Of a stretch of 64,000 nucleotides of DNA, positions 1 to 33,448 are shown one piece after another. Position 1 is the stretch's first letter. Each line of letters starts with the position of its first letter. A model generated the notes under the pieces. It had not been told where the DNA came from. It saw nothing but the letters and a program-made list of their open reading frames with translations, and searched no databases. Origin of the DNA: Dendrobates tinctorius (Eukaryota); contig NW_027361695.1 of assembly GCF_039654945.1 (NCBI RefSeq), positions 6,696,001 through 6,760,000 on the forward strand, given 5' to 3'. Made by a program: the position numbers and the translations under genes.

Positions 1-1935
1 TTACATCCTGTATTATACCCCAGAGCTGCACTCACTATTCTGCTGGTGCAGTCACCGTGTACATACATTACATTACTGTTCCTGAGTTACATCCTGTATT
101 ATACTCCAGAGCTGCACTCACTATTCTGCTGGTGCAGTCACTGTGTACATACATTACATTACTGATCCTGAGTTACATCCTGTATTATACTCCAGAGCTG
201 CACTCACTATTCTGCTGGTGCAGTCACTGTGTACATACATTACATTACTGATCCTGAGTTACATCCTGTATTATACTCCAGAGCTGCACTCACTATTCTG
301 CTGGTACAGTCACTGTGTACATACATTACATTACTGATCCTGAGTTACATCCTGTATTATACTCCAGAGCTGCACTCACTATTCTGCTGGTGCAGTCACT
401 GTGTACATACATTACATTACTGATCCTGAGTTACCTCCTGTATTATACCCCAGAGCTGCACTCACTATTCTGCTGGTGCAGTCACTGTGTACATACATTA
501 CACTACTGATCCTGAGTTACATCCTGTATTATACCCCAGAGCTGCACTCACTATTCTGCTGGTGCAGTCACTGTATACATACATTACTGATCCTGAGTTA
601 CATCCTGTATTATACACCAGAGCTGCACTCACTATTCTGCTGGTGCAGTCACTGTGTACACACATTACATTACTGATCCCGAGTTACATCCTGTATTATA
701 CTCCAGAGCTGCACTCACTATTCTGCTGGTGCAGTCACTGTGTACACACATTACATTACTGATCCTGAGTTACATCCTGTATTATACTCCAGAGCTGCAC
801 TCACTATTCTGCTGGTGCAGTCACTGTGTACACACATTACATTACTGATCCCGAGTTACATCCTGTATTATACTCCAGAGCTGCACTCACTATTCTGCTG
901 GTGCAGTCACTGTGTACACACATTACATTACTGATCCTGAGTTACATCCTGTATTATACTCCAGAGCTGCACTCACTATTCTGCTGGTGCAGTCACTGTG
1001 TACATACATTACATTACTGATCCTGAGTTACATCCTGTATTATACCCCAGAGCTGCACTCACTATTCTGCTGGTGCAGTCACTGTGTACATACATTACAT
1101 TACTGATCCTGAGTTACACCCTGTATTATACTCCAGAGCTGCACTCACTATTCTGCTGGTGCAGTCACTGTGTACACACATTACATTACTGATCCTGAGT
1201 TACATCCTGTATTATACACCAGAGCTGCACTCACTATTCTGCTGGTGCAGTCACTGTGTACACACATTACATTACTGATCCCGAGTTACATCCTGTATTA
1301 TACTCCAGAGCTGCACTCACTATTCTGCTGGTGCAGTCACTGTGTACACACATTACATTACTGATCCTGAGTTACATCCTGTATTATACTCCAGAGCTGC
1401 ACTCACTATTCTGCTGGTGCAGTCACTGTGTACACACATTACATTACTGATCCCGAGTTACATCCTGTATTATACTCCAGAGCTGCACTCACTATTCTGC
1501 TGGTGCAGTCACTGTGTACACACATTACATTACTGATCCCGAGTTACATCCTGTATTATACTCCAGAGCTGCACTCACTATTCTGCTGGTGCAGTCACTG
1601 TGTACACACATTACATTACTGATCCTGAGTTACATCCTGTATTATACTCCAGAGCTGCACTCACTATTCTGCTGGTGCAGTCACTGTGTACACACATTAC
1701 ATTACTGATCCCGAGTTACATCCTGTATTATACTCCAGAGCTGCACTCACTATTCTGCTGGTGCAGTCACTGTGTACACACATTACATTACTGATCCTGA
1801 GTTACATCCTGTATTATACTCCAGAGCTGCACTCACTATTCTGCTGGTGCAGTCACTGTGTACATACATTACATTACTGATCCTGAGTTACATCCTGTAT
1901 TATACCCCAGAGCTGCACTCACTATTCTGCTGGTG
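1..1935 (+). repeat. 86-bp tandem satellite (with 81-bp variant), truncated by window start
   Basis: Unit TTACATCCTGTATTATACTCCAGAGCTGCACTCACTATTCTGCTGGTGCAGTCACTGTGTACATACATTACATTACTGATCCTGAG repeated ~22 times; ORF starts recur every 86 bp; the 81-bp variant lacks one ATTAC. Confidence 0.98.
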
Positions 1936-3121: not shown

Positions 3122-3848
3122 CAATGTTTAAAAAGCAGTAAATTGCAAAAGTGATTGTTTTTACGACTACGATCCGACAATGTATTAATTAATAATAGGG
3201 AAAATTAAATGATGCTTCACTGGGAGCGAATCATCTATTGGGGGGTATAATCCAAGGACTACACTGATCCTCATACACAATGCACTAGACGTTTGAGGTT
3301 TGTTCTCTGGTTCCCAGGCTTTCTGCCCAAATGATGACAGTTTCGAGGGAATGACTGGCAGCCCCGGGTCATTGACCCAATGACGTCATGTGTGCATTAG
3401 TATCCAGGGGGTAAAGTGCCACGGTGGGTAAATAGTGGCTATTTAGCATTTTTATGATGGGCATGGATGCAGGGTCGGACTGGGGTGTCTAGGGCCCACC
3501 AAGGGAATTAATTTTAGGGGCCCACCTACAGTAATGTACAACTCAACATTTAGGCTTTGAGATCGCGGAATTACACCATGGGTTCTTTTGCCGTATATCC
3601 CACACCAAATCTGCATCATTTCAGCATCCTAATTCTACTAAAAGCTGCACCGTTGTTCATATGCTGCAGATCTTTCCGCACTACGATTCATTTAATCCAT
3701 TAGGGCCGCAGGCATGTTTTCACCTTAATGCCCAGGCCATTTTTTGCAAATCTGACCTGTGTTACTTTGAAGTTAAAAAGTGACCCCATTTTGGAATCTA
3801 CACCGCTGGTTACATTGTCTAATAATCATTATATTTTATATATATTTT

Positions 3849-6800
3849 GAACGGAGGTTACTACATCGACATGATACGAGAACGGAGCTTACAAGATAGA
3901 CATGATACGAGAACGGAGCTTACAACATAGACATGATACGAGAACGGAGCTTACTACATAGACATGATACCAAAACGGAGCTTACTACATAGACATGATA
4001 CCAGAACGGAGCTTACTACATAGACATGATACCAGAAGGGAGCTTACTACATAGACATGATACCAGAACGGAGCTTACAACATAAACATGATACCAGAAC
4101 GGAGCTTACAACATAGACATGATACGAGAACGGAGCTTACAACATAGACATGATACCAGAACGGAGGTTACTACATCGACATGATACCAGAACGGAGCTT
4201 ACTACATCGACACGATACCAGAACGGAGCTTACTACATAGACATGATACCAGAACGGAGGTTACTACATCGACATGATACCAGAACGGAGCTTACTACAT
4301 CGACATAATACCAGAACGGAGCTTACAACATAGACATGATACCAGAACAGAGCTTACAACATAGACATGATACCAGAAGGGAGCTTACAACATAGACATG
4401 ATACCAGAACGGAGGTTACTACATAGACATGATACCAGAACGGAGCTTACTACATCGACATGATACCAGAACGGAGCTTACAACATAGACATGATACCAG
4501 AACGGAGCTTACTACATCGACACGATACCAGAACGGACCTTACTACATCGACACGATACCAGAACGGAGCTTACTACATCGACACGATACCAGAACGGAG
4601 CTTACTACATAGACACGATACCAGAACGGAGCTTACTACATCGACACGATACCAGAACGGAGCTTACTACTTCGACATGATACCAGAACGGAGCTTACTA
4701 CATAGACATGATACCAGAACGGAGCTTACTACATCGACATGATACCAGAACGGAGCTTACTACATCGACATGATACCAGAATGGAGCTTACTACATAGAC
4801 ATGATACCAGAACGGAGCTTACTACATCGACATGATACCAGAACGGAGCTTACTACATAGACATGATACCAGAACGGAGCTTACTACATCGACATGATAC
4901 CAGAACGGACCTTACTACATCGACATGATACCAGAACGGAGCTTACTACATAGACATGATACCAGAACGGAGCTTACTACATCGACATGATACCAGAACG
5001 GAGCTTACTACATCGACATGATACCAGAACGAAGCTTACTACATGGACATGATACCAGAACGAAGCTTACTACATCGACACGATACCAGAACGGAGCTTA
5101 CTACATCGACACGATACCAGAACGGAGCTTACTACATCGACACGATACCAGAACGGAGTTTACTACATAGACACGATACCAGAAGGGAGCTTACAACATA
5201 GACATGATACCAGAACGGAGGTTACTACATCGACATGATACCAGAACGGAGCTTACAACATAGACATGATACCAGAACGGAGCTTACTACATCGACATGA
5301 TACCAGAACGGACCTTACTACATCGACACGATACCAGAACGGAGCTTACTACATCGACACGATACCAGAACGGAGCTTACTACATAGACACGATACCAGA
5401 ACGGAGCTTACTACATCGACATGATACCAGAACGGAGCTTACTACATAGACATGATACCAGAACGGAGCTTACTACATCGACATGATACCAGAACGGAGC
5501 TTACTACATCGACATGATACCAGAACGGAGCTTACTACATAGACATGATACCAGAACGGAGCTTACTACATAGACATGATACCAGAACGGAGCTTACTAC
5601 ATAGACATGATACCAGAACGGAGCTTACTACATCGACATGATACCAGAACGGACCTTACTACATCGACATGATACCAGAACGGAGCTTACTACATAGACA
5701 TGATACCAGAACGGAGCTTACTACATCGACATGATACCAGAACGGAGCTTACTACATAGACATGATACAAGAACGGAGCTTACTACATCGACATGATACC
5801 AGAACGGAGCTTACTACATCGACATGATACCAGAACGGAGCTTACTACATCGACATGATACCAGAACGAAGCTTACTACATGGACACGATACCAGAACGA
5901 AGCTTACTACATCGACACGATACCAGAACGGAGCTTACTACATAGACATGATACCAGAACGGAGCTTACTACATCGACATGATACCAGAACGGAGCTTAC
6001 TACATCGACATGATACCAGAACGGAGCTTACTACATCGACATGATACCAGAACGGAGCTTACTACATCGACATGATACCAGAACGGAGCTTACTACATAG
6101 AAATGATACCAGAACGGAGCTTATTACATCGACATGATACCAGAACGGAGCTTACTACATCGACATGATACCAGAACGGAGCTTACTACATCGACATGAT
6201 ACCAGAACGGAGCTTACTACATAGAAATGATACCAGAACGGAGCTTACTACATCGACATGATACCAGAACGGAGCTTACTACATCGACATGATACCAGAA
6301 CGGAGATAACTACATCGACATGATACCAGAACGGAGCTTACTACATAGACATGATACCAGAACGGAGGTTACTACATCGACATGATACCAGAACGGAGCT
6401 TACTACATCGACATGATACCAGAACGGAGCTTACTACATCGACATGATACCAGAACGGAGCTTACTACATCGACATGATACCAGAACGGAGCTTACTACA
6501 TCGACATGATACCAGAACGGAGCTTACAACATAGACATGATACCAGAACGGAGCTTACTACATAGACATGATACCAGAACGGAGCTTACTACATAGACAT
6601 GATACCAGAACGGAGCTTACTACATCGACATGATACCAGAACGGAGCTTACTACATCGACATGATACCAGAACGGAGCTTACTACATCGACATGATACCA
6701 GAACGGAGCTTACTACATCGACACGATACCAGAACGGAGCTTACAACATAGACATGATACCAGAACGGAGCTTACTACATAGACATGATACCAGAACGGA

Positions 6801-9800
6801 GCTTACTACATCGACATGATACCAGAACGGAGCTTACTACATCGACATGATACCAGAACGGAGCTTACAACATAGACATAATACCAGAACGGAGCTTACT
6901 ACATCGACACGATACCAGAACGGAGCTTACAACATAGACATGATACCAGAACGGAGCTTACTACATAGACATGATACCAGAACGGAGCTTACTACATAGA
7001 CATGATACCAGAACGGAGCTTACTACATAGACACGATACCAGAACGGAGCTTACTACATCGACATGATACCAGAACGGAGATAACTACATCGACATGATA
7101 CCAGAACGGAGGTTACTACATCGACATGATACCAGAATGGAGCTTACTACATCGACATGATACCAGAACGGAGCTTACTACATCGACATGATACCAGAAC
7201 GGAGCTTACTACATCGACATGATACCAGAACGGAGCTTACAACATAGACATGATACCAGAACGGAGCTTACTACATAGACATGATACCAGAACGGAGCTT
7301 ACTACATAGACATGATACCAGAACGGAGCTTACTACATCGACATGATACCAGAACGGAGCTTACTACATCGACATGATACCAGAACGGAGCTTACTACAT
7401 CGACATGATACCAGAACGGAGCTTACTACATCGACACGATACCAGAACGGAGCTTACAACATAGACATGATACCAGAACGGAGCTTACTACATAGACATG
7501 ATACCAGAACGGAGCTTACTACATAGACATGATACCAGAACGGAGCTTACTACATAGACACGATACCAGAACGGAGCTTACTACATCGACATGATACCAG
7601 AACGGAGATAACTACATCGACATGATACCAGAACGGAGGTTACTACATCGACATGATACCAGAATGGAGCTTACTACATCGACATGATACCAGAACGGAG
7701 CTTACTACATCGACATGATACCAGAACGGAGCTTACTACATCGACATGATACCAGAACGGAGCTTACAACATAGACATGATACCAGAACGGAGCTTACTA
7801 CATAGACATGATACCAGAACGGAGCTTACTACATAGACATGATACCAGAACGGAGCTTACTACATCGACATGATACCAGAACGGAGCTTACTACATCGAC
7901 ATGATACCAGAACGGAGCTTACTACATCGACATGATACCAGAACGGAGCTTACTACATCGACATGATACCAGAACGGAGCTTACAACATAGACATGATAC
8001 CAGAACGGAGCTTACTACATCGACATGATACCAGAACGGAGCTTACAACATAGACATGATACCAGAACGGAGCTTACTACATAGACATGATACCAGAACG
8101 GAGCTTACTACATAGACATGATACCAGAACGGAGCTTACTACATCGACATGATACCAGAACGGAGCTTACTACATCGACATGATACCAGAACGGAGCTTA
8201 CTACATCGACATGATACCAGAACGGAGGTTACTACATCGACATGATACCAGAACGGAGCTTACAACATAGACATGATACCAGAACGGAGCTTACTACATC
8301 GACACGATACCAGAACGGACCTTACTACATCGACACGATACCAGAACGGAGCTTACTACATCGACACGATACCAGAACGGAGCTTACTACATAGACACGA
8401 TACCAGAACGGAGCTTACTACATCGACATGATACCAGAACGGAGCTTACTACATCGACATGATACCAGAACGGAGCTTACTACATAGACATGATACCAGA
8501 ACGGAGCTTACTACATCGACATGATACCAGAACGGAGCTTACTACATCGACATGATACCAGAACGGAGCTTACTACATAGACATGATACCAGAACGGAGC
8601 TTACTACATAGACATGATACCAGAACGGAGCTTACTACATAGACATGATACCAGAACGGAGCTTACTACATCGACATGATACCAGAACGGACCTTACTAC
8701 ATCGACATGATACCAGAACGGAGCTTACTACATAGACATGATACCAGAACGGAGCTTACTACATCGACATGATACCAGAACGGAGCTTACTACATAGACA
8801 TGATACCAGAACGGAGCTTACTACATCGACATGATACCAGAACGGAGCTTACTACATCGACATGATACCAGAACGGAGCTTACTACATCGACATGATACC
8901 AGAACGAAGCTTACTACATGGACACGATACCAGAACGAAGCTTACTACATCGACACGATACCAGAACGGAGCTTACTACATAGACACGATACCAGAACGG
9001 AGCTTACTACATCGACATGATACCAGAACGGAGCTTACTACATCGACATGATACCAGAACGGAGCTTACTACATCGACATGATACCAGAACGGAGCTTAC
9101 TACATCGACATGATACCAGAACGGAGCTTACTACATAGAAATGATACCAGAACGGAGCTTATTACATCGACATGATACCAGAACGGAGCTTACTACATCG
9201 ACATGATACCAGAACGGAGCTTACTACATCGACATGATACCAGAACGGAGCTTACTACATAGAAATGATACCAGAACGGAGCTTACTACATCGACATGAT
9301 ACCAGAACGGAGCTTACTACATCGACATGATACCAGAACGGAGATAACTACATCGACATGATACCAGAACGGAGCTTACTACATAGACATGATACCAGAA
9401 CGGAGGTTACTACATCGACATGATACCAGAACGGAGCTTACTACATCGACATGATACCAGAACGGAGCTTACTACATCGACATGATACCAGAACGGAGCT
9501 TACTACATCGACATGATACCAGAACGGAGCTTACTACATCGACATGATACCAGAACGGAGCTTACAACATAGACATGATACCAGAACGGAGCTTACTACA
9601 TAGACATGATACCAGAACGGAGCTTACTACATCGACATGATACCAGAACGGAGCTTACTACATCGACACGATACCAGAACGGAGCTTACAACATAGACAT
9701 GATACCAGAACGGAGCTTACTACATAGACATGATACCAGAACGGAGCTTACTACATCGACACGATACCAGAACGGAGCTTACAACATAGACATGATACCA

Positions 9801-12800
9801 GAACGGAGCTTACTACATAGACATGATACCAGAACGGAGCTTACTACATCGACATGATACCAGAACGGAGCTTACTACATCGACATGATACCAGAACGGA
9901 GCTTACAACATAGACATAATACCAGAACGGAGCTTACTACATCGACACGATACCAGAACGGAGCTTACAACATAGACATGATACCAGAACGGAGCTTACT
10001 ACATAGACATGATACCAGAACGGAGCTTACTACATAGACATGATACCAGAACGGAGCTTACTACATAGACACGATACCAGAACGGAGCTTACTACATCGA
10101 CATGATACCAGAACGGAGATAACTACATCGACATGATACCAGAACGGAGGTTACTACATCGACATGATACCAGAACGGAGCTTACTACATCGACATGATA
10201 CCAGAACGGAGCTTACTACATCGACATGATACCAGAACGGAGCTTACTACATCGACATGATACCAGAACGGAGCTTACAACATAGACATGATACCAGAAC
10301 GGAGCTTACTACATAGACATGATACCAGAACGGAGCTTACTACATAGACATGATACCAGAACGGAGCTTACTACATCGACATGATACCAGAACGGAGCTT
10401 ACTACATCGACATGATACCAGAACGGAGCTTACTACATCGACATGATACCAGAACGGAGCTTACAACATAGACATGATACCAGAACGGAGCTTACTACAT
10501 CGACACGATACCAGAACGGAGCTTACAACATAGACATGATACCAGAACGGAGCTTACTACATAGACATGATACCAGAACGGAGCTTACTACATAGACATG
10601 ATACCAGAACGGAGCTTACTACATAGACACGATACCAGAACGGAGCTTACTACATCGACACGATATCAGAACGGAGCTTACTACATAGACACGATACCAG
10701 AACGGAGCTTACTACATAGACATGATACCAGAACGGAGCTTACTACATCGACACGATATCAGAACGGAGCTTACAACATCGACATAATACCAGAACGGAG
10801 GTTACAACATAGACATGATACCAGAACGGAGCTTACTACATAGACACGATACCAGAACGGAGCTTACTACATCGACATGATACCAGAACGGAGCTTACTA
10901 CATCGACATGATACCAGAACGGAGATTACTACATCGACATGATACCAGAACGGAGCTTACTACATAGAAATGATACCAGAACGGAGCTTACTACATCGAC
11001 ATGATACCAGAACGGAGCTTACTACATCGACATGATACCAGAACGGAGCTTACTACATCGACATGATACCAGAACGGAGCTTACTACATAGAAATGATAC
11101 CAGAACGGAGCTTACTACATCGACATGATACCAGAACGGAGCTTACTACATCGACATGATACCAGAACGAAGCTTACTACATGGACATGATACCAGAACG
11201 AAGCTTACTACATCGACACGATACCAGAACGGAGCTTACTACATCGACATGATACCAGAACGGAGCTTACTACATCGACACGATACCAGAACGGAGTTTA
11301 CTACATAGACACGATACCAGAAGGGAGCTTACAACATAGACATGATACCAGAACGGAGGATACTACATCGACATGATACCAGAACGGAGCTTACAACATA
11401 GACATGATACCAGAACGGAGCTTACTACATCGACATGATACCAGAACGGACCTTACTACATCGACACGATACCAGAACGGAGCTTACTACATCGACACGA
11501 TACCAGAACGGAGCTTACTACATAGACACGATACCAGAACGGAGCTTACTACATCGACATGATACCAGAACGGAGCTTACTACATCGACATGATACCAGA
11601 ACGGAGCTTACTACATAGACATGATACCAGAACGGAGCTTACTACATCGACATGATACCAGAACGGAGCTTACTACATCGACATGATACCAGAACGGAGC
11701 TTACTACATAGACATGATACCAGAACGGAGCTTACTACATAGACATGATACCAGAACGGAGCTTACTACATAGACATGATACCAGAACGGAGCTTACTAC
11801 ATCGACATGATACCAGAACGGACCTTACTACATCGACATGATACCAGAACGGAGCTTACTACATAGACATGATACCAGAACGGAGCTTACTACATCGACA
11901 TGATACCAGAACGGAGCTTACTACATAGACATGATACCAGAACGGAGCTTACTACATCGACATGATACCAGAACGGAGCTTACTACATCGACATGATACC
12001 AGAACGGAGCTTACTACATCGACATGATACCAGAACGAAGCTTACTACATGGACACGATACCAGAACGAAGCTTACTACATCGACACGATACCAGAACGG
12101 AGCTTACTACATAGACATGATACCAGAACGGAGCTTACTACATCGACATGATACCAGAACGGAGCTTACTACATCGACATGATACCAGAACGGAGCTTAC
12201 TACATCGACATGATACCAGAACGGAGCTTACTACATAGAAATGATACCAGAACGGAGCTTACTACATCGACATGATACCAGAACGGAGCTTACTACATCG
12301 ACATGATACCAGAACGGAGCTTACTACATCGACATGATACCAGAACGGAGCTTACTACATAGAAATGATACCAGAACGGAGCTTACTACATCGACATGAT
12401 ACCAGAACGGAGCTTACTACATCGACATGATACCAGAACGGAGATAACTACATCGACATGATACCAGAACGGAGCTTACTACATAGACATGATACCAGAA
12501 CGGAGGTTACTACATCGACATGATACCAGAACGGAGCTTACTACATCGACATGATACCAGAACGGAGCTTACTACATCGACATGATACCAGAACGGAGCT
12601 TACTACATCGACATGATACCAGAACGGAGCTTACTACATCGACATGATACCAGAACGGAGCTTACAACATAGACATGATACCAGAACGGAGCTTACTACA
12701 TAGACATGATACCAGAACGGAGCTTACTACATAGACATGATACCAGAACGGAGCTTACTACATCGACATGATACCAGAACGGAGCTTACTACATCGACAT

Positions 12801-15800
12801 GATACCAGAACGGAGCTTACTACATCGACATGATACCAGAACGGAGCTTACTACATCGACACGATACCAGAACGGAGCTTACAACATAGACATGATACCA
12901 GAACGGAGCTTACTACATAGACATGATACCAGAACGGAGCTTACTACATCGACATGATACCAGAACGGAGCTTACTACATCGACATGATACCAGAACGGA
13001 GCTTACAACATAGACATAATACCAGAACGGAGCTTACTACATCGACACGATACCAGAACGGAGCTTACAACATAGACATGATACCAGAACGGAGCTTACT
13101 ACATAGACATGATACCAGAACGGAGCTTACTACATAGACATGATACCAGAACGGAGCTTACTACATAGACACGATACCAGAACGGAGCTTACTACATCGA
13201 CATGATACCAGAACGGAGATAACTACATCGACATGATACCAGAACGGAGGTTACTACATCGACATGATACCAGAACGGAGCTTACTACATCGACATGATA
13301 CCAGAACGGAGCTTACTACATCGACATGATACCAGAACGGAGCTTACTACATCGACATGATACCAGAACGGAGCTTACAACATAGACATGATACCAGAAC
13401 GGAGCTTACTACATAGACATGATACCAGAACGGAGCTTACTACATAGACATGATACCAGAACGGAGCTTACTACATCGACATGATACCAGAACGGAGCTT
13501 ACTACATCGACATGATACCAGAACGGAGCTTACTACATCGACATGATACCAGAACGGAGCTTACAACATAGACATAATACCAGAACGGAGCTTACTACAT
13601 CGACACGATACCAGAATGGAGCTTACAACATAGACATGATACCAGAACGGAGCTTACTACATAGACATGACACCAGAACGGAGCTTACTACATAGACATG
13701 ATACCAGAACGGAGCTTACTACATAGACACGATACCAGAACGGAGCTTACTACATCGACACGATATCAGAACGGAGCTTACTACATAGACACGATACCAG
13801 AACGGAGCTTACTACATAGACATGATACCAGAACGGAGCTTACTACATCGACACGATATCAGAACGGAGCTTACAACATCGACATAATACCAGAACGGAG
13901 GTTACAACATAGACATGATACCAGAACGGAGCTTACTACATAGACACGATACCAGAACGGAGCTTACTACATCGACATGATACCAGAACGGAGCTTACTA
14001 CATCGACATGATACCAGAACGGAGATTACTACATCGACATGATACCAGAACGGAGCTTACTACATAGAAATGATACCAGAACGGAGCTTACTACATCGAC
14101 ATGATACCAGAACGGAGCTTACTACATCGACATGATACCAGAACGGAGCTTACTACATCGACATGATACCAGAACGGAGCTTACTACATAGAAATGATAC
14201 CAGAACGGAGCTTACTACATCGACATGATACCAGAACGGAGCTTACTACATCGACATGATACCAGAACGGAGATAACTACATCGACATGATACCAGAACG
14301 GAGCTTACTACATAGACATGATACCAGAACGGAGGTTACTACATCGACATGATACCAGAACGGAGCTTACTACATCGACATGATACCAGAACGGAGCTTA
14401 CTACATCGACATGATACCAGAACGGAGCTTACTACATCGACATGATACCAGAACGGAGCTTACTACATCGACATGATACCAGAACGGAGCTTACAACATA
14501 GACATGATACCAGAACGGAGCTTACTACATAGACATGATACCAGAACGGAGCTTACTACATAGACATGATACCAGAACGGAGCTTACTACATCGACATGA
14601 TACCAGAACGGAGCTTACTACATCGACAGGATACCAGAACGGAGCTTACTACATCGACATGATACCAGAACGGAGCTTACTACATCGACACGATACCAGA
14701 ACGGAGCTTACAACATAGACATGATACCAGAACGGAGCTTACTACATAGACATGATACCAGAACGGAGCTTACTACATAGACATGATACCAGAACGGAGC
14801 TTACTACATCGACATGATACCAGAACGGAGCTTACTACATCGACATGATACCAGAACGGAGCTTACTACATCGACATGATACCAGAACGGAGCTTACAAC
14901 ATAGACATAATACCAGAATGGAGCTTACTACATCGACACGATACCAGAACGGAGCTTACAACATAGACATGATACCAGAACGGAGCTTACTACATAGACA
15001 TGATACCAGAACGGAGCTTACTACATAGACATGATACCAGAACGGAGCTTACTACATAGACACGATACCAGAACGGAGCTTACTACATCGACATGATACC
15101 AGAACGGAGATAACTACATCGACATGATACCAGAACGGAGGTTACTACATAGACATGATACCAGAACGGAGCTTACTACATCGACATGATACCAGAACGG
15201 AGCTTACTACACCGACATGATACCAGAACGGAGCTTACTACATCGACATGATACCAGAACGGAGCTTACTACATCGACATGATACCAGAACGGAGCTTAC
15301 TACATCGACATGATACCAGAACGGAGCTTACTACATCGACATGATACCAGAACGGAGCTTACTACATCGACATGATACCAGAACGGAGCTTACAACATAG
15401 ACATGATACCAGAACGGAGCTTACTACATAGACATGATACCAGAACGGAGCTTACTACATAGACATGATACCAGAACGGAGCTTACTACATAGACATGAT
15501 ACCAGAACGGAGCTTACTACATCGACATGATACCAGAACGGAGCTTACTACATCGACATGATACCAGAACGGAGCTTACTACATCGACATGATACCAGAA
15601 CGGAGCTTACTACATCGACACGATACCAGAACGGAGCTTACAACATAGACATGATACCAGAACGGAGCTTACTACATAGACATGATACCAGAACGGAGCT
15701 TACTACATCGACATGATACCAGAACGGAGCTTACTACATCGACATGATACCAGAACGGAGCTTACAACATAGACATAATACCAGAACGGAGCTTACTACA

Positions 15801-18800
15801 TCGACACGATACCAGAACGGAGCTTACAACATAGACATGATACCAGAACGGAGCTTACTACATAGACATGATACCAGAACGGAGCTTACTACATAGACAT
15901 GATACCAGAACGGAGCTTACTACATAGACACGATACCAGAACGGAGCTTACTACATCGACATGATACCAGAACGGAGATAACTACATCGACATGATACCA
16001 GAACGGAGGTTACTACATCGACATGATACCAGAACGGAGCTTACTACATCGACATGATACCAGAACGGAGCTTACTACATCGACATGATACCAGAACGGA
16101 GCTTACTACATTGACATGATACCAGAACGGAGCTTACAACATAGACATGATACCAGAACGGAGCTTACTACATAGACATGATACCAGAACGGAGCTTACT
16201 ACATAGACATGATACCAGAACGGAGCTTACTACATCGACATGATACCAGAACGGAGCTTACTACATCGACATGATACCAGAACGGAGCTTACTACATCGA
16301 CATGATACCAGAACGGAGCTTACAACATAGACATAATACCAGAACGGAGCTTACTACATCGACACGATACCAGAACGGAGCTTACAACATAGACATGATA
16401 CCAGAACGGAGCTTACTACATAGACATGATACCAGAACGGAGCTTACTACATAGACATGATACCAGAACGGAGCTTACTACATAGACACGATACCAGAAC
16501 GGAGCTTACTACATCGACACGATATCAGAACGGAGCTTACTACATAGACACGATACCAGAACGGAGCTTACTACATAGACATGATACCAGAACGGAGCTT
16601 ACTACATCGACACGATATCAGAACGGAGCTTACAACATCGACATAATACCAGAACGGAGGTTACAACATAGACATGATACCAGAACGGAGCTTACTACAT
16701 AGACACGATACCAGAACGGAGCTTACTACATCGACATGATACCAGAACGGAGCTTACTACATCGACATGATACCAGAACGGAGATTACTACATCGACATG
16801 ATACCAGAACGGAGCTTACTACATAGAAATGATACCAGAACGGAGCTTACTACATCGACATGATACCAGAACGGAGCTTACTACATCGACATGATACCAG
16901 AACGGAGCTTACTACATCGACATGATACCAGAACGGAGCTTACTACATAGAAATGATACCAGAACGGAGCTTACTACATCGACATGATACCAGAACGGAG
17001 CTTACTACATCGACATGATACCAGAACGAAGCTTACTACATGGACATGATACCAGAACGAAGCTTACTACATCGACACGATACCAGAACGGAGCTTACTA
17101 CATCGACATGATACCAGAACGGAGCTTACTACATCGACACGATACCAGAACGGAGTTTACTACATAGACACGATACCAGAAGGGAGCTTACAACATAGAC
17201 ATGATACCAGAACGGAGGTTACTACATCGACATGATACCAGAACGGAGCTTACAACATAGACATGATACCAGAACGGAGCTTACTACATCGACATGATAC
17301 CAGAACGGACCTTACTACATCGACACGATACCAGAACGGAGCTTACTACATCGACACGATACCAGAACGGAGCTTACTACATAGACACGATACCAGAACG
17401 GAGCTTACTACATCGACATGATACCAGAACGGAGCTTACTACATCGACATGATACCAGAACGGAGCTTACTACATAGACATGATACCAGAACGGAGCTTA
17501 CTACATCGACATGATACCAGAACGGAGCTTACTACATCGACATGATACCAGAACGGAGCTTACTACATAGACATGATACCAGAACGGAGCTTACTACATA
17601 GACATGATACCAGAACGGAGCTTACTACATAGACATGATACCAGAACGGAGCTTACTACATCGACATGATACCAGAACGGACCTTACTACATCGACATGA
17701 TACCAGAACGGAGCTTACTACATAGACATGATACCAGAACGGAGCTTACTACATCGACATGATACCAGAACGGAGCTTACTACATAGACATGATACCAGA
17801 ACGGAGCTTACTACATCGACATGATACCAGAACGGAGCTTACTACATCGACATGATACCAGAACGGAGCTTACTACATCGACATGATACCAGAACGAAGC
17901 TTACTACATGGACACGATACCAGAACGAAGCTTACTACATCGACACGATACCAGAACGGAGCTTACTACATAGACATGATACCAGAACGGAGCTTACTAC
18001 ATCGACATGATACCAGAACGGAGCTTACTACATCGACATGATACCAGAACGGAGCTTACTACATCGACATGATACCAGAACGGAGCTTACTACATAGAAA
18101 TGATACCAGAACGGAGCTTACTACATCGACATGATACCAGAACGGAGCTTACTACATCGACATGATACCAGAACGGAGCTTACTACATCGACATGATACC
18201 AGAACGGAGCTTACTACATAGAAATGATACCAGAACGGAGCTTACTACATCGACATGATACCAGAACGGAGCTTACTACATCGACATGATACCAGAACGG
18301 AGATAACTACATCGACATGATACCAGAACGGAGCTTACTACATAGACATGATACCAGATCGGAGGTTACTACATCGACATGATACCAGAACGGAGCTTAC
18401 TACATCGACATGATACCAGAACGGAGCTTACTACATCGACATGATACCAGAACGGAGCTTACTACATCGACATGATACCAGAACGGAGCTTACTACATCG
18501 ACATGATACCAGAACGGAGCTTACAACATAGACATGATACCAGAACGGAGCTTACTACATAGATATGATACCAGAACGGAGCTTACTACATAGACATGAT
18601 ACCAGAACGGAGCTTACTACATCGACATGATACCAGAACGGAGCTTACTACATCGACATGATACCAGAACGGAGCTTACTACATCGACATGATACCAGAA
18701 CGGAGCTTACTACATCGACACGATACCAGAACGGAGCTTACAACATAGACATGATACCAGAACGGAGCTTACTACATAGACATGATACCAGAACGGAGCT

Positions 18801-21800
18801 TACTACATCGACATGATACCAGAACGGAGCTTACTACATCGACATGATACCAGAACGGAGCTTACAACATAGACATAATACCAGAACGGAGCTTACTACA
18901 TCGACACGATACCAGAACGGAGCTTACAACATAGACATGATACCAGAACGGAGCTTACTACATAGACATGATACCAGAACGGAGCTTACTACATAGACAC
19001 GATACCAGAACGGAGCTTACTACATAGACACGATACCAGAACGGAGCTTACTACATCGACATGATACCAGAACGGAGATAACTACATCGACATGATACCA
19101 GAACGGAGGTTACTACATCGACATGATACCAGAACGGAGCTTACTACATCGACATGATACCAGAACGGAGCTTACTACATCGACATGATACCAGAACGGA
19201 GCTTACTACATCGACATGATACCAGAACGGAGCTTACAACATAGACATGATACCAGAACGGAGCTTACTACATAGACATGATACCAGAACGGAGCTTACT
19301 ACATAGACATGATACCAGAACGGAGCTTACTACATCGACATGATACCAGAACGGAGCTTACTACATCGACATGATACCAGAACGGAGCTTACTACATCGA
19401 CATGATACCAGAACGGAGCTTACAACATAGACACAATACCAGAACGGAGCTTACTACATCGACACGATACCAGAACGGAGCTTACAACATAGACATGATA
19501 CCAGAACGGAGCTTACTACATAGACATGATACCAGAACGGAGCTTACTACATAGACACGATACCAGAACGGAGCTTACTACATAGACACGATACCAGAAC
19601 GGAGCTTACTACATCGACACGATATCAGAACGGAGCTTACTACATAGACACGATACCAGAACGGAGCTTACTACATAGACACGATACCAGAACGGAGCTT
19701 ACTACATCGACACGATATCAGAACGGAGCTTACAACATCGACATAATACCAGAACGGAGGTTACAACATAGACACGATACCAGAACGGAGCTTACTACAT
19801 AGACACGATACCAGAACGGAGCTTACTACATCGACATGATACCAGAACGGAGCTTACTACATCGACATGATACCAGAACGGAGATTACTACATCGACATG
19901 ATACCAGAACGGAGCTTACTACATAGAAATGATACCAGAACGGAGCTTACTACATCGACATGATACCAGAACGGAGCTTACTACATCGACATGATACCAG
20001 AACGGAGCTTACTACATCGACATGATACCAGAACGGAGCTTACTACATAGAAATGATACCAGAACGGAGCTTACTACATCGACATGATACCAGAACGGAG
20101 CTTACTACATCGACATGATACCAGAACGGAGATAACTACATCGACATGATACCAGAACGGAGCTTACTACATAGACATGATACCAGAACGGAGGTTACTA
20201 CATCGACATGATACCAGAACGGAGCTTACTACATCGACATGATACCAGAACGGAGCTTACTACATCGACATGATACCAGAACGGAGCTTACTACATCGAC
20301 ATGATACCAGAACGGAGCTTACTACATCGACATGATACCAGAACGGAGCTTACAACATAGACATGATACCAGAACGGAGCTTACTACATAGACATGATAC
20401 CAGAACGGAGCTTACTACATAGACATGATACCAGAACGGAGCTTACTACATCGACATGATACCAGAACGGAGCTTACTACATCGACAGGATACCAGAACG
20501 GAGCTTACTACATCGACATGATACCAGAACGGAGCTTACTACATCGACACGATACCAGAACGGAGCTTACAACATAGACATGATACCAGAACGGAGCTTA
20601 CTACATAGACATGATACCAGAACGGAGCTTACTACATAGACATGATACCAGAACGGAGCTTACTACATCGACATGATACCAGAACGGAGCTTACTACATC
20701 GACATGATACCAGAACGGAGCTTACAACATAGACATAATACCAGAACGGAGCTTACTACATCGACACGATACCAGAACGGAGCTTACAACATAGACATGA
20801 TACCAGAACGGAGCTTACTACATAGACACGATACCAGAACGGAGCTTACTACATAGACATGATACCAGAACGGAGCTTACTACATAGACACGATACCAGA
20901 ACGGAGCTTACTACATCGACATGATACCAGAACGGAGCTTACTACATCGACATGATACCAGAACGGAGCTTACTACATCGACATGATACCAGAACGGAGC
21001 TTACTACATCGACATGATACCAGAACGGAGCTTACTACATCGACATGATACCAGAACGGAGCTTACTACATCGACATGATACCAGAACGGAGCTTACAAC
21101 ATAGACATGATACCAGAACGGAGCTTACTACATAGACATGATACCAGAACGGAGCTTACTACATAGACATGATACCAGAACGGAGCTTACTACATCGACA
21201 TGATACCAGAACGGAGCTTACTACATAGACATGATACCAGAACGGAGCTTACTACATAGACATGATACCAGAACGGAGCTTACTACATCGACATGATACC
21301 AGAACGGAGCTTACTACATCGACATGATACCAGAACGGAGCTTACTACATCGACACGATACCAGAACGGAGCTTACTACATCGACATGATACCAGAACGG
21401 AGCTTACTACATCGACACGATACCAGAACGGAGCTTACTACATAGACATGATACCAGAACGGAGCTTACTACATCGACACGATACCAGAACGGAGCTTAC
21501 TACATCGACATGATACCAGAACGGAGCTTACTACATCGACATGATACCAGAACGGAGCTTACTACATAGACACGATACCAGAACGGAGCTTACTACATAG
21601 ACACGATACCAGAACGGAGCTTACTACATCGACACGATATCAGAACGGAGCTTACTACATAGACATGATACCAGAACGGAGCTTACTACATAGACACGAT
21701 ACCAGAACGGAGCTTACTACATAGACACGATACCAGAACGGAGCTTACTACATAGACACGATACCAGAACGGAGCTTACTACATCGACATGATATCAGAA

Positions 21801-22253
21801 CGGAGCTTACTACATAGACATGATACCAGAACGGAGCTTACTACATCGACATGATATCAGAACGGAGCTTACTACATAGACACGATACCAGAACGGAGCT
21901 TACTACATAGACACGATACCAGAACGGAGCTTACTACATCGACATGATATCAGAACGGAGCTTACTACATAGACATGATACCAGAACGGAGCTTACTACA
22001 TAGACATGATACCAGAACGGAGCTTACTACATCGACACGATATCAGAACGGAGCTTACTACATAGACACGATACCAGAACGGAGCTTACTACATAGACAT
22101 GATACCAGAACGGAGCTTACTACATAGACATGATACCAGAACGGAGCTTACTACATAGACACGATACCAGAACGGAGCTTACTACATCGACATGATATCA
22201 GAACGGAGCTTACTACATAGACATGATACCAGAACGGAGCTTACTACATAGAT
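3849..22253 (+). repeat. 31-bp satellite, ~594 monomers, with higher-order structure
   Basis: Consensus GAACGGAGCTTACTACATCGACATGATACCA; register preserved from 3849 to 22201 (18352 = 592 x 31). Confidence 0.99.
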
Positions 22254-22269
22254 ACGATACTTACTACTT

Positions 22270-22392
22270 ACACGCAGAATGTAACTATGGCTTCTCCCCT
22301 GTAAATTTGATGCTGAAATAAAAATGTACATATCACACTTTCTGAACATAACTGTGGCTTCTTCCCTGTGTGAATTCCCTGATGTACATTTG
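22270..22392 (-). pseudogene. Decayed C2H2 zinc-finger gene fragment (two linker motifs)
   Basis: Minus strand reads HQGIHTGKKPQLCSES..., then after a frameshift ACA GGG GAG AAG CCA (TGEKP); resembles the HQRIHTGEKPxxCxEC finger-linker consensus. Confidence 0.65.
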
Positions 22393-22477
22393 ATTTCTTT
22401 GGAGTTGATTTGACAGAAACAAATTGTGAGCGAATAATTCATTGATTTTGAATGGAGCTTACAACATAGACATGATA

Positions 22478-22752
22478 CCAGAGGGGGCCACTACACAGCC
22501 CAGGCAGAGAGGGACCCACTACAAGGCCCTGGCAGAGGGGGGCCCACTACATGGCCCGGTAGAGGGGGGCCCACTACATGGCCCGGTAGAGGGGGGCCAA
22601 TACATGACCCAAGCAGAGGGGGGCACACTACACAGCCCAGGCAGAGGGGGGCCGCTACACAGCCCAAGTAGGGGGGGCACACTACAAGGCCCTGGCAGAG
22701 GGGGCCCGGCCCACTACACAGACCAGGCAGAGGGGGGCCCATTGCAAGGCCC
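22478..22752 (+). repeat. GC-rich ~27-30-bp degenerate tandem repeat inside the hAT element
   Basis: ~9-10 copies of a GCAGAGGGGGGCCCACTACA(C/T/A)(A/G)GCCC(A/G/T)G-like unit. Confidence 0.85.
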
Positions 22753-24624
22753 AGCGCAGCATTCCTCCAGAGTCCTCCTGTACATTGGTGGCAGTGTGGG
22801 TGGCACTGCACTTTTACTTACATTAATGCAGCAGCAGGCAGCAGCGCAGCGCTGGATCAGATCATGCAGACTCAGTCAGGCAGCCGAGGTGGTTCTGCAG
22901 AGGCAGCGCGCGTTCCCGGGCTGCACACAGACAACGCGGTCACGTGAGGAGGGACACCAGGGGTGGAGTCGGCGCTGCTTTCCTGCCCTGTGTGCTGTGC
23001 TGTGTGTGGCTGAGTCGAATGGCGGAGGCGGGTGCCGCACTGTACGGGCGGGCCAGGGGCCGGGCAGACGTGATCGGGGCGGCGCCGGAGCTGGATGATC
23101 TGATTCATCAGTGACTCAGTCACAACACAGGTACGACTCAAGCGACCAGTGACTGTGACCTGTGAGTGACAGTGACATTCGGGGGCGGGGCCCACCGAGG
23201 GATCCAACGATACCTCGGTGGGCCAGTCCGAGCCTGCATGGATGTGGCTATCTGATAATATCAAGATTCATGTAATATAGCTCCTGGATTGAGATGGAAG
23301 TTGATTGCCCCCTCCTGAAAGAAATGGCAGACCAAAGTTGATAAAAACAGAAGGACTACACTTTTCACGGAGACACAACAAGCTTGATGGTTGCAAATCT
23401 CACATTAGGCACAGGAGCTTGGTGGTTGCAGTTCTAGCCATGTGACACAACCTGAACAATCCTCAGTTTCCAATATGTATGACGTTCCCAAGCCTTTGTT
23501 AGCTTCACATGGACCTTAGGCTTATGGTCCCTCACACAGACCTGTAGATGGCATTTGCCTGACACCAGTTTGCATTAAACTTTGCAACACACTATCCACA
23601 TGCGACCAAAGGGGAGGTCAAGGTCACTGCTATTCAAGTCTCTATTTCGAGGAGACCTTCAATAATAACTCCCTTCTTACACGCTTCCACCACCCAACAA
23701 GCCGGAACCAGATAGACGAAACTATAGATCTCAGGGCATAACGTTTTCAGCTGCACAATGTTCATAAAGTCCTCCTATGATGATGTCCTTCACAGCCTCT
23801 CTGGAGTCCATCCTGGCCTAACCTGCCCTGCCTCTCTCCCAGGCTGATTCCTTCCCTGTTGACAACTCTCTTTGCCCACACTTTCTCCAGAAAATTTTCC
23901 TTCCACCCTCTTCCACCGCTAGACTAAACCATGCCCCAATTGGTAACGAATTTATAGGTCAGGTCTCCAAAGATCCTGACTTCAGTCTCTTGGTCTTGCT
24001 CCGCCATATCATAGTGTTAACTCTTAAACAGTAGGTTGTCCTAAAAAGTGCCATGTGATACACAGAACAGCGTCTATACAGGCCCCGCGTCACCGTCGCC
24101 CCTCCTACAAAGAACACTCCGCTTCATTCAACAGGCTTCAATATTCCCTGACTAACAAGTCCACACCGGCTCTAAGATCATCAGCACTCCTCTGATGGAC
24201 AGTCCCTAACTCTTCAAATAGGCCAATGCCAACCGCATGTCTCTTTTATGCCACGCACAAACACTCTGCCACCTTGGTGCCAAACCAGTCCCTTATTTCA
24301 TCTCCTCTCTACCTTGACCCAACGTGATGAAGCATTTAGGGGTCATGATGTACACTTCAATGTCAGAGTGCGGCTCCTCATGGGCCTGAACTCATGGTGG
24401 CACCTCCTTCTCTTAGTTGTCAATCAAGAAACTAATCAGTTATGGTGACAGGACATGCTGCCGAGTACTGGCAAACCATTATCCTGCTTATCCAGGAAAA
24501 AACAAAAATGCATAATGACATTTTACACCGAACAACACCATATACAAACAGTAACATACTGTATGTATTACATTTACATAGCAGATTCCAGACAAGAACA
24601 AACAAATGGTAAAGCAGTCTCATC

Positions 24625-26119: not shown

Positions 26120-26410
26120 ATGTCTCAGCACAGCCAAGACTCCGAGTTGGATGAACTGTTTGCAGATATTGACGAAGATGAGATTTTGGCCAATTTGTCT
26201 CCAGAAGAGCTAAAGGAGCTCCAGAGCGAAATGGAGGTCCTGGCACCAGATCCGAAAGTACCAGTGGGCATGATCCAAAGGGACCAGACGGAGAAAGCAC
26301 CCACTGGGCAATTTGACCACAGATCGCTCATCGATTATTTGCACTGGGAGAAGGAATCTAAACGGATGTTGGAGGAGGAAAGAGTTCCTGTTACGCTTCT
26401 GCCATCAGAG
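26120..26410 (+). CDS. LMOD3: Leiomodin-3, coding exon 1 (tropomyosin-binding N-terminus)
   Basis: MSQHSQDS...[23 protein letters not shown]...[18 protein letters not shown]...[10 protein letters not shown]; ACCATG start; GAG|GTAAGA donor, phase 0. Confidence 0.96.
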
Positions 26411-26450
26411 GTAAGATGGCACCGACTGGAAAAAAAAAATGTCACGCTAT

Positions 26451-26940
26451 AGGGTAAAAAAAAAGAAATAACAAAGGATAAACAAGGCAAAAGAAAAATA
26501 GGTAATAGAAAAATAAAGTAGCATAGGGTGAGAAAAAAGTCAAATTAGGGCTAAAGATAAAAAAAATCGAGGTTAAAGAGGGCAAAAGAAAAAAAGATAA
26601 AAGAAAAATAAAGTAGCATAGGGCGAGAAAAAAGTCAAATTAGGGCTAAAGATAAAAAAAATTATTAAGGGCTAAAAAAATGAAATAACGGTAAACAGGG
26701 CAAAAGAACAAAATATGTAAAAGAGAAGTAAACTAGCATGGGATGAGAAAAAAAGTCAAACTAGGGCTAAAGATTTAAAAAAAAAATCACTAAAGGGCTA
26801 AAAAAGAAATAGCACAGGGTAATAAAAGAAAAATAATGTAGCATAGGGTGAGAAAAAAGTCAAACTAGGGCTAAAGATATAAAAGAAGTCACTAAAGGGC
26901 TAAGAAAAAAAAAAACTAAAGAAAGGGCTAAAGAAACAAA
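26451..26940 (+). repeat. Degenerate A-rich tandem repeat in LMOD3 intron 1
   Basis: Four recurrences of TAGCATAGGGTGAGAAAAAAGTCAAA(T/C)TAGGGCTAAAGAT about 95-125 bp apart. Confidence 0.8.
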
Positions 26941-27739: not shown

Positions 27740-28527
27740 TGATAACACCTCTATATACAGTAAATAACAGGACCCGCCATTCATTATAGGTGATGTCACA
27801 GCTCACCTCCTCCTCCTGTACAATGACTGATAACACCTCTATATACAGTAGATAACACAGGATCCGCCATTTACAATAGGTGACATCACAGCTCACCTCC
27901 TCCTCCTCCTCCTGTACAATGACTGATATCACCTCTATATACAGTAGATAACACAGGATCCACCGTTCACAATAGGTAATGTCACAGCTCACCTCCTCCT
28001 GTACAATGACTGATAACACCTCTATGTACAGTAGATAACACAGGATCCATAATTTATTCACAATAGGTGATGTCACAGCTCACTTACTCCCCCTCCTGTA
28101 AAATGACTGATATAACACCTATATATACAGTACTTAACACAGGATCCACCACCCCCCTCCTCTACAATGACTCATAACACTTCTATATACAGTAGAAAAC
28201 ACAGGATCCACCATTCACAATAGGTGATGTCACAGCTCACCTCTTTCCCCTCCTGTACAATGACTGACAACACCTCTGTATACAGTACTTAACACAGGAT
28301 TCACCATTCACAATAGATGATGTCACAGCTCACCTCTTCCCCCTCCTGTACAATGAATGATAACACCTCTATATACAGTACTTAACACAGGATCCACCAT
28401 TCACAATTGATGATGTCACAGCTCACCTCCTCCTCCTGTACAATAACTGGTAACACCTCTATATACAGTAGATAACACAGGATCCACCATTCACAATAGC
28501 GGATGTCACAGCTCACCTCCTCCTCCT
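27740..28527 (+). repeat. ~90-bp minisatellite (~9 copies) in LMOD3 intron 1
   Basis: Unit ACACAGGATCCACCATTCACAATAGGTGATGTCACAGCTCACCTCCTCCTCCTGTACAATGACTGATAACACCTCTATATACAGTAGATA; a partial copy recurs near 61768-61793. Confidence 0.92.
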
Positions 28528-29047: not shown

Positions 29048-30035
29048 GTAATAGAAACGAACCACTATGTATGGACAATCAAAAATATAAAGACAATGGG
29101 ACTGGAATATATATTTAAAAAAAAAATTTTTTTTTTTTTTTTATTCTTTAATGAGTTCAAGTCAGGCAATCATAAAAATAGTGTAAAAGCAAGTGCCAAT
29201 GGCAAACCAAAAAAATATACAATCACAATATACATATATATGATCATTCATACGGACTGTCTAATAAAATGTATCGCAATATAATATAATATATCTCCAT
29301 ATCACACACAGATATCAATAAAGGATTAAGTGTATAAAATATAAACAATATATAAGCTAGAAAATATATCAAATTACCACATACCACAGCAGAATAATTC
29401 TATCCACAATTGGGTTATAAACTAGTATATAAATCCATATTAGTAATATGCCATAGTAGTGAATAGACCTGTAACACAGTGTGTGACCATATAATGATAC
29501 TCAAACTATGGGGAGTGCCGGGCAATACCTTGAGGCTGTCTCCACACTACGGGTATGTTATATTCACATTGGCTCACATAGTTTGAGTATCATTATATGG
29601 TCACACACTGTGTTACAGGTCTATTCACTACTATGGCATATTACTAATATGGATTTATATACTAGTTTATAACCCAATTGTGGATAGAATTATTCTGCTG
29701 TGGTATGTGGTAATTTGATATATTTTCTAGCTTATATATTGTTTATATTTTATACACTTAATCCTTTATTGATATCTGTGTGTGATATGGAGATATATTA
29801 TATTATATTGCGATACATTTTATTAGTCCGTATGAATGATCATATATATGTATATTGTGATTGTATATTTTTTTGGTTTGCCATTGGCACTTGCTTTTAC
29901 ACTATTTTTATGATTGCCTGAATTGAACTCATTAAAGAATAAAAGAAAAAAAAAATAATTTTTTTTAAATATATATTCCAGTCCCATTGTCTTTATATTT
30001 TTGATTGTCCATACATAGTGGTTCGTTTCTATTAC
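29048..30035. repeat. Long near-perfect inverted repeat (arms ~460 bp, spacer 66 bp)
   Basis: 29048-29510 is the reverse complement of 29577-30035 apart from a few substitutions and indels. Confidence 0.97.
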
Positions 30036-30300
30036 AGTACTGAATGATTTCCATTCAAATCTATGACATACTAGGAATAATTTAATATGTACATTATTTG
30101 ATTTCATTATTGTCATTATATGAAGATTGATACAATATTTTATTATTTTCCTACTGTGGTGTCTATTTTGTTACTAATCAACATTTGTCTATAGAGTGCA
30201 GCGTATTGACTTTCTGTACTACAGTTTTGTATTAATTTCAATATTATTTGTATCTGTGACATTTCAAAACTCATCATAAATATTATGTTTTTAATATTAG

Positions 30301-33341: not shown

Positions 33342-33448
33342 TTTTTTTGGAAAGTAGGCAGCAGTGCAAATTTTTATACTCCACTTTCATATAATCCTAA
33401 AAGTGAAATTAGTGCCGACGACTAATTACTGTATTTGGTTTATTACAG

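What the first reader, a model, noticed from the sequence alone, without database searches (positions are those of the whole stretch)
3462..23244. An 18-kb satellite array packaged inside one hAT-like transposon (TIRs plus perfect 8-bp TSD ~19.8 kb apart)
Seen: CATGGATG|CAGGGTCGGACTGG at 3462-3483 and CCAGTCCGAGCCTG|CATGGATG at 23223-23244, with GGGCCCACC subterminal motifs at both ends and no transposase. Established: CAGG...CCTG short TIRs with 8-bp TSDs are hallmarks of the hAT superfamily. Inference: a non-autonomous element of roughly 1.4 kb (excluding the array) acts as a vehicle for satellite DNA. Either it moved carrying an array or, more likely, the array grew >10-fold in place. The intact TSD suggests a young insertion, 2.9 kb upstream of the LMOD3 ATG.
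Basis: partly seen in the sequence, partly recalled or inferred. Interest (0 to 1): 0.85.

Follow-up and report, generated by a model that had tools for sequence, protein, structure and literature searches.

The report
Frog transposon carrying expanded satellite array
A short jumping gene with no transposase of its own, inserted 2.9 kb upstream of the muscle gene LMOD3 in the dyeing poison frog, holds an 18.4-kb run of 594 copies of a 31-base unit; this is a very clean example of a process already known from other frogs, in which transposons breed satellite DNA.

Summary
A perfect 8-bp direct repeat (CATGGATG, 3462-3469 and 23237-23244) flanks 14-bp inverted ends matching 13/14 (3470-3483 and 23223-23236). 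Between them lie a 379-bp left arm, 593.9 in-register copies of a 31-bp unit (3849-22260, no indels), a 185-bp spacer, one solo 31-mer, ten copies of a 27-bp unit, and a CpG-rich core. No coding domain was found.

All seven GGCCCAC motifs in the 64-kb window lie inside the element, clustered next to both ends. The ends are therefore not a chance pair.

The window is Dendrobates tinctorius, and the LMOD3 start codon lies 2,876 bp downstream.

Best reading: a non-autonomous hAT-type DNA transposon whose internal minisatellite expanded by block duplication. Two 5.1-kb blocks are 99.77% identical, and the array edges are the most divergent part.

Superfamily assignment rests on end structure only. 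Insertion age and how much of the array grew in place remain inferred.

Transposon-borne satellites are already documented in frogs (Xstir/Xmix, miDNA4), and this scan earlier followed up a hAT with repeat arrays on other DNA of this genome. This is a new member of a known kind, of moderate interest.

The parts
3462..3469 (.). Left target-site duplication CATGGATG
   Evidence: Identical to 23237-23244
3470..3483 (+). Left terminal inverted repeat CAGGGTCGGACTGG
   Evidence: 13/14 match to the reverse complement of 23223-23236. These are the only two matches in the window at up to 2 mismatches.
3470..3848 (+). Left arm, 379 bp and 41% GC. It carries two GGGCCCACC subterminal motifs at 3492-3500 and 3518-3526.
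   Evidence: No other copy in the window, no Pfam domain, no degenerate 31-mers.
3849..22260 (+). 31-bp tandem array: 593 full units plus a 29-nt partial unit, consensus GAACGGAGCTTACTACATCGACATGATACCA, 46 variants, no indels, CpG observed/expected 1.18
9739..14853 (+). 5,115-bp block (165 units) repeated at 15598-20712, a lag of 189 units, with 12 differences (99.77% identity)
   Evidence: Seven of the 12 differences are CpG/TpG changes.
15598..20712 (+). Second copy of the 5,115-bp block
22261..22449 (+). AT-rich spacer between the array and the solo 31-mer, with no similarity to the 31-mer
22450..22480 (+). Solo 31-mer, one mismatch from array variant GAACGGAGCTTACAACATAGACATGATACCA. It runs in phase into the 27-bp array.
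22479..22759 (+). 27-bp minisatellite, about 10 copies, GC-rich. It contains the GGGGCCCACTACA motif that resembles the left subterminal GGGGCCCACCTACA.
22760..23222 (.). CpG-rich core. 22851-23250 meets CpG-island criteria. It contains ATGGCGG (23019), three GC boxes and CACGTG (22941). Splice-donor-like sites face away from the core on both strands: minus strand at 22824, plus strand at 23128 and 23159.
23189..23224 (.). Subterminal hairpin formed by two inverted GGCCCACCGAGG motifs
   Evidence: DNA fold -21.8 kcal/mol, z -5.0.
23223..23236 (-). Right terminal inverted repeat (reverse complement CAGGCTCGGACTGG)
23237..23244 (.). Right target-site duplication CATGGATG
26120..26437 (+). Context: LMOD3 coding exon 1 (start codon at 26120)

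Best explanation
A non-autonomous class II transposon of about 1.36 kb, with hAT-type ends, inserted once into unique intergenic DNA 2.9 kb upstream of LMOD3 in Dendrobates tinctorius and duplicated the 8-bp target CATGGATG.

Its interior carried short tandem repeats related to its own subterminal motif. One 31-bp variant then expanded by repeated unequal exchange or replication slippage of blocks of about 17-26, 89-101 and 189 units, giving today's 18.4-kb array. At least part of this growth probably happened at this locus.

The element cannot move by itself. Any mobility would need a hAT transposase supplied in trans that recognises CAGG[G/C]TCGGACT plus the GGCCCAC repeats.

Shown: the anatomy, the non-chance pairing of the ends, the absence of coding capacity and the recent block duplications. 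Inferred: the superfamily, the origin of the 31-mer from the 27-mer, and that expansion followed insertion.
For: - Ends: perfect 8-bp TSD and 13/14 TIR. This TIR occurs nowhere else in the window. No comparable complex TSD+TIR configuration appears in shuffles.
- Shared motif: both ends continue into GGCCCACC[A/G]AGG, and all 7 GGCCCAC motifs of the 64-kb window lie inside the element.
- Fit to the published hAT description: TIRs of 10-25 bp and 8-bp TSDs (PMC3942097); short subterminal repeats bound by the transposase BED domain (PMC10368747).
- Abundance: hAT elements make up 3.91% of this genome (PMC11152451).
- Single insertion: the flanks are unique sequence, and no inner TIR copies exist that would indicate two separate elements.
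- Expansion: there are nested higher-order blocks, with 5,115 bp duplicated at 99.77% identity. Units at both array edges are the most divergent, 1.63 and 1.43 against 0.7-1.27 mismatches per unit in the interior bins, as expected under unequal exchange.
- Origin of the unit: a solo 31-mer lies in phase with the 27-bp array. The units align CAGAACGGAGCTTACTACA / CAGAGGGGGGCCCACTACA at 14/19, reached by 15 of 500 shuffles.
Against: - No second copy of either arm, no autonomous partner and no empty site could be examined.
- The TSD CATGGATG fits neither target preference I recall for the hAT Ac group (nTnnnnAn) or Buster group (nnnTAnnn). This is from memory, and these are preferences, not rules.
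- At 19.8 kb the element is far above the usual 2.5-5 kb for hAT.
- The 31-mer/27-mer similarity is modest.
- Nothing orders expansion relative to insertion.
- Array length in an assembly can be wrong, and this could not be checked.
Confidence: 0.68

Rival explanations
1. The same element transposed as a roughly 20-kb unit that already carried most of the array. It would be a giant non-autonomous hAT acting as a true vehicle, and little growth occurred at this locus.
For: The intact TSD and TIR and the very homogeneous array are both compatible with a very recent insertion. Unchecked notes of this scan list several 9-19-kb hAT-like elements in this genome.
Against: The last duplication of 5.9 kb differs at only 0.23%, with seven of the twelve differences at CpG sites. 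Array size therefore changes on a very short timescale, and the present length is unlikely to be the length at insertion. hAT elements are usually 2.5-5 kb. There is no direct evidence either way.
Confidence: 0.22
2. The element belongs to another class II superfamily that makes 8-bp or similar TSDs (P, Mutator-like, Merlin, Zisupton), not to hAT.
For: No transposase is present, so the assignment rests on the ends alone. The TSD does not fit the recalled hAT target preferences.
Against: The TIR is short (14 bp), starts CAGGG and ends CCTG, and comes with short subterminal repeats, which is the hAT pattern. From memory, P and Mutator TIRs are longer or start differently.
Confidence: 0.08
3. The TIR and TSD are a coincidence, and the array is an ordinary intergenic satellite with unrelated flanks.
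For: Only one instance could be examined.
Against: For a search within about 1.5 kb of each array edge, the expected number of 8/8 + 13/14 configurations is about 5e-6 by my calculation. Twenty block shuffles of the whole window gave only 3 hits in total, even at the looser 12/14 threshold. The shared GGCCCAC motif is confined to the element.
Confidence: 0.02

Closest known systems
MITE-borne satellites of Xenopus: Xstir on the Xmix MITE (X. laevis) and the miDNA4 MITE-driven satellite (X. tropicalis), as summarised in PMC9659126
   Same: A non-autonomous class II element in a frog carries a tandem repeat born inside the element. The repeat is amplified into arrays and homogenised.
   Different: The review lists miDNA4 as Tc1-mariner and gives no superfamily for Xmix; here the ends are hAT-type. 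Here a single copy holds about 594 units (18.4 kb) with TIRs and TSD still intact. Family-wide behaviour is unknown.
Tetris foldback transposon and its satellite in Drosophila virilis (PMC4079207, listed)
   Same: Internal tandem repeats of a DNA transposon supply the building blocks of an emerging satellite.
   Different: It is a foldback element with long TIR-derived repeats, in an insect host, and the satellite is documented at many loci.
Non-autonomous hAT elements such as maize Ds (PMC3260210) and Drosophila hAT MITEs mar and BuT2 (PMC3517528, PMC3942097)
   Same: Short TIRs, 8-bp TSD, subterminal repeats, no transposase, and dependence on a transposase supplied in trans.
   Different: Those are typically 0.4-4 kb without a long internal array, and their autonomous partners are known.
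hAT with its transposase between two uniform repeat arrays, found on other DNA of this genome (scan finding s1-362235, follow-up summary)
   Same: Same genome, a hAT-type element, and homogeneous tandem arrays inside the element.
   Different: That copy keeps a (disabled) transposase gene. Its sequence relationship to this element was not testable here.

Membership tests
hAT superfamily (non-autonomous member) | 8-bp target-site duplication | tested here: met
   CATGGATG matches 8/8 at 3462-3469 and 23237-23244. Definition from PMC3942097.
hAT superfamily (non-autonomous member) | Short TIRs of 10-25 bp, starting CAG/TAG | tested here: met
   14 bp at 13/14, CAGGG...CCTG. Extends to about 24 aligned positions with an 11-bp indel.
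hAT superfamily (non-autonomous member) | Short subterminal repeats near both ends (transposase BED-domain sites) | tested here: met
   GGCCCAC occurs twice within 57 bp of the left end and twice within 48 bp of the right end. All 7 window occurrences are inside the element. Protein binding itself is not testable. Concept from PMC10368747.
hAT superfamily (non-autonomous member) | A hAT transposase (BED, DDE, hAT dimerisation domain) in an autonomous relative with the same ends | not testable with these tools
   None in the element and no such TIR elsewhere in the window. DNA of the frog genomes was not retrievable.
hAT superfamily (non-autonomous member) | Target preference nTnnnnAn (Ac group) or nnnTAnnn (Buster group), recalled from Arensburger et al. 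2011 | tested here: not met
   CATGGATG has A at position 2, T at position 7 and GG at positions 4-5. This is a statistical preference, not a defining rule, and it is recalled from memory.
hAT superfamily (non-autonomous member) | Multiple dispersed copies with different TSDs | not testable with these tools
   No copy in the window. Protein-based detours were blank. The metagenome scan gave only chance bacterial hits.
Transposon-borne satellite (Xstir/miDNA4 type) | Tandem array lies wholly inside the TIR/TSD boundaries | tested here: met
   Array 3849-22260 lies inside 3470-23236.
Transposon-borne satellite (Xstir/miDNA4 type) | Repeat unit derived from the element's own sequence | tested here: inconclusive
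   A solo unit lies in phase with the 27-bp repeat. Similarity is 14/19, reached by 15 of 500 shuffles. No degenerate units in the arms.
Transposon-borne satellite (Xstir/miDNA4 type) | Copy number of the unit varies among family copies, and arrays occur at many loci | not testable with these tools
   No other copies were accessible.
Satellite DNA in the strict sense | Long homogeneous array with higher-order structure | tested here: met
   18,412 bp, with nested blocks at lags of 89-101 and 189 units.
Satellite DNA in the strict sense | Substantial genomic abundance at several loci | not testable with these tools
   All 594 matches in the window are in this one array. Look-ups by sequence in the scan's findings were blank.

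The most novel reading that the evidence does not exclude
This element family may be a working vehicle that moves long satellite arrays. On this reading, a roughly 20-kb non-autonomous hAT transposed with its array. It carries a CpG-island, bidirectional-promoter-like core next to the repeats, so it would seed transcribed satellite loci near genes such as LMOD3.
Probability: 0.12. Interest if true: 0.65.

Novelty: new member of a known kind. Interest (0 to 1): 0.35.

Why it matters
This is an unusually clean intermediate between a transposon and a satellite. The array is already 18 kb long, yet the element's ends and target duplication are untouched, so the array's place of birth is still legible. 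If the family has other copies with few units, this locus would let array growth be timed and its block-duplication steps be read directly in a 6-Gb frog genome. It would also show how DNA transposons add tandem DNA next to genes. It does not change current understanding.

Tried and rejected
- Other copies in the window: blastn of both arms and the spacer against the window found none.
- Paralogous empty site: the joined flanks are unique in the window.
- Composite of two MITEs: there are no inner TIR copies at up to 2 mismatches. A weak 10/14 TIR-like stretch at 22867-22880 (I2) is within chance for this GC-rich region.
- Rfam: no family in the whole window.
- Protein detours to find other copies:
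  - The right-arm ORF against 5.8 billion proteins was blank.
  - The exact look-up of the 218-aa arm ORF was blank.
  - HMMER against 1.84 billion representatives hit only the low-complexity part encoded by the 27-mer. The best-looking hit, L007, is an unrelated 27-bp repeat with no DNA similarity.
- Metagenome scan for the TIR plus motif: five GC-rich bacterial contigs, all chance matches.
- Orthologous LMOD3 loci: D. tinctorius, Ranitomeya variabilis and R. imitator returned no DNA because the files were too large. P0004 is only a transcript contig.
- Literature search for the TIR and the 31-mer strings: nothing relevant.
- Degenerate 31-mers in the left arm, spacer or core: none.
- I ran no further search on short non-coding flank ORFs, because the chance of a hit was too low.
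Full report
**What is there.**

The window contains no N. Its query translated from 30316-31821, which is almost all LMOD3 exon 2, is 100% identical to leiomodin-3 of Dendrobates tinctorius. The coding exons map to 26120-26437, about 30300-31818 and about 33419-33475.

Reading left to right across 3462-23244:

| Coordinates | Feature |
|---|---|
| 3462-3469 | Target-site duplication CATGGATG |
| 3470-3483 | Left end CAGGGTCGGACTGG |
| 3470-3848 | 379-bp AT-rich left arm with GGGCCCACC at 3492 and 3518 |
| 3849-22260 | 31-bp tandem array |
| 22261-22449 | AT-rich spacer |
| 22450-22480 | One solo 31-mer |
| 22479-22759 | About ten copies of a GC-rich 27-bp unit |
| 22760-23222 | CpG-rich core |
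| 23189-23224 | Hairpin of two inverted GGCCCACCGAGG motifs (DNA fold z -5.0) |
| 23223-23236 | Right end, reverse complement CAGGCTCGGACTGG |
| 23237-23244 | CATGGATG again |

The right TSD ends 2,876 bp before the LMOD3 ATG.

**Is it more than chance?**

- The ends match 13/14 and the duplication 8/8.
- The degenerate end pattern with up to two mismatches occurs only at these two places in 64 kb.
- I scanned the window exhaustively for an 8-bp direct repeat adjoining a 14-bp inverted repeat of at least 12/14 within 30 kb. It found this pair and otherwise almost only A/T low-complexity runs. Twenty block shuffles gave three hits in total.
- With an 11-bp indel the two termini continue to align through GGCCCACC[A/G]AGG.
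- All five exact GGGCCCAC (0.95 expected) and all seven GGCCCAC/GTGGGCC in the window lie inside the element, next to both ends and in the 27-bp repeat.

The two ends therefore belong together.

**What kind of element?**

The literature describes hAT elements as having 10-25-bp TIRs and 8-bp TSDs (PMC3942097). It also describes short subterminal repeats that the transposase BED domain binds (PMC10368747). All three features are met here.

The arms hold no Pfam domain and total only 1,355 bp, so the element is non-autonomous. hAT elements make up 3.91% of the D. tinctorius assembly (PMC11152451).

Points against a simple filing:
- The TSD does not fit the Ac-group or Buster-group target preferences as I recall them.
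- The element is four times the usual maximum size.
- The defining protein could not be linked to it.

I therefore call it hAT-type by end structure, not a proven member.

**The array.**

The 593 full units stay in register with no indel. There are 46 variants and on average 0.98 mismatches per unit to the consensus.

Units at the two edges are the most divergent, at 1.63 and 1.43 mismatches against 0.7-1.27 in the interior bins. This is the pattern expected when unequal exchange homogenises the interior.

Written as a string of variants, the array shows nested higher-order blocks. The strongest lag is 189 units. A 165-unit stretch (9739-14853) recurs at 15598-20712 with 12 differences in 5,115 bp. 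Further blocks repeat at lags of 98-100 and 89 units at 99.6-99.8% identity.

Seven of those 12 differences are CpG/TpG changes, so the last step, which added 5.9 kb, is very recent. CpG observed/expected in the array is 1.18, again pointing to youth.

This agrees with the scan note s1-377272 on the same stretch.

**Where did the 31-mer come from?**

- The arms, spacer and core hold no decayed 31-mers.
- A solo unit sits 189 bp beyond the array and runs in phase into the 27-bp repeat.
- The two units align at 14/19, a score reached by 15 of 500 shuffles. By my reading of the fuller 31-mer/28-mer alignment, most of the mismatches are transitions.
- The 27-bp unit itself carries the element's subterminal motif.

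An origin of the satellite unit from the element's own internal repeat is therefore plausible, as note s1-377052 proposed, but it is only modestly supported.

**How it most likely works.**

The element inserted once by cut-and-paste, using a transposase supplied in trans. This step is inferred.

Its internal minisatellite then grew by unequal sister-chromatid exchange or slippage of progressively larger blocks. The duplications themselves are shown; the mechanism is inferred.

Whether most of the growth followed insertion cannot be decided here. The speed of the last duplication makes it unlikely that today's length is the length that transposed.

**Right-arm core.**

- 22851-23250 meets CpG-island criteria.
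- It holds a YY1-like ATGGCGG, three GC boxes and an E-box.
- Donor-like sites face away from the core on both strands.

Several unchecked notes of this scan describe such promoter-like cores in unrelated MITEs of this genome. I saw another at about 59455-60045. The simplest reading here is the retained promoter and first exon of the parent transposon. Transcription is untested.

**What could not be done.**

No other copy, autonomous partner, alternate haplotype or orthologous site could be retrieved:
- The frog assemblies were too large for the contig tool.
- The DNA collections that can be scanned are microbial or viral.
- Protein detours were blank or low-complexity.

**Comparison and novelty.**

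Satellites born in and carried by non-autonomous DNA transposons are well documented. Examples are Xstir on the Xmix MITE and miDNA4 in Xenopus, Tetris in Drosophila, and Helitron-borne and pearl-borne repeats in other animals (PMC9659126; PMC4079207). A follow-up in this scan reached the same verdict for another hAT with arrays on other DNA of this genome (s1-362235).

This locus stands out for its cleanliness and size: about 594 units between intact ends. It is not a new mechanism. Verdict: a real feature and a new member of a known kind, of moderate interest (0.35).

Noticed in passing
window 1-1935 and 35735-36807: An 86-bp satellite (22.6 copies, 97% matches) runs off the window start. 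Copies of it in inverted orientation (96-98% complementary) lie about 34 kb away, so the two arrays bracket the transposon and LMOD3.
   Followed up: no
window 29248-29839: A near-perfect AT-rich palindrome in LMOD3 intron 1, with 263-nt arms that are 98% complementary and a 66-nt spacer. It looks like a foldback or MITE-like insertion.
   Followed up: partly
window about 59455-60045: A palindromic MITE-like element. Inverted arms enclose a CpG core containing GCGCATGCGC (NRF1-like) and several AAAATGGCG / AAGATGGCG (YY1-like) motifs. It matches the 'portable bidirectional promoter' MITEs noted elsewhere in this genome.
   Followed up: partly
window 27740-28523: Tandem repeats of about 93-96 bp (and multiples) in LMOD3 intron 1, 81-88% matches.
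   Followed up: no
window 32399-33390: Periodic open reading frames on both strands (Pro/Ser-rich and Gly/Arg-rich) indicate a GC-rich tandem repeat in the last LMOD3 intron. The stretch also meets CpG-island criteria at 32351-33250.
   Followed up: no
window 41401-43150: A 1.7-kb CpG-island-like stretch with ORFs of 345-554 aa on both strands. It lies near where the neighbouring PRA1-family gene is annotated on the minus strand. Its nature was not examined.
   Followed up: no
window 26475-26940: An A-rich tandem repeat of 95-121 bp immediately after LMOD3 exon 1.
   Followed up: no
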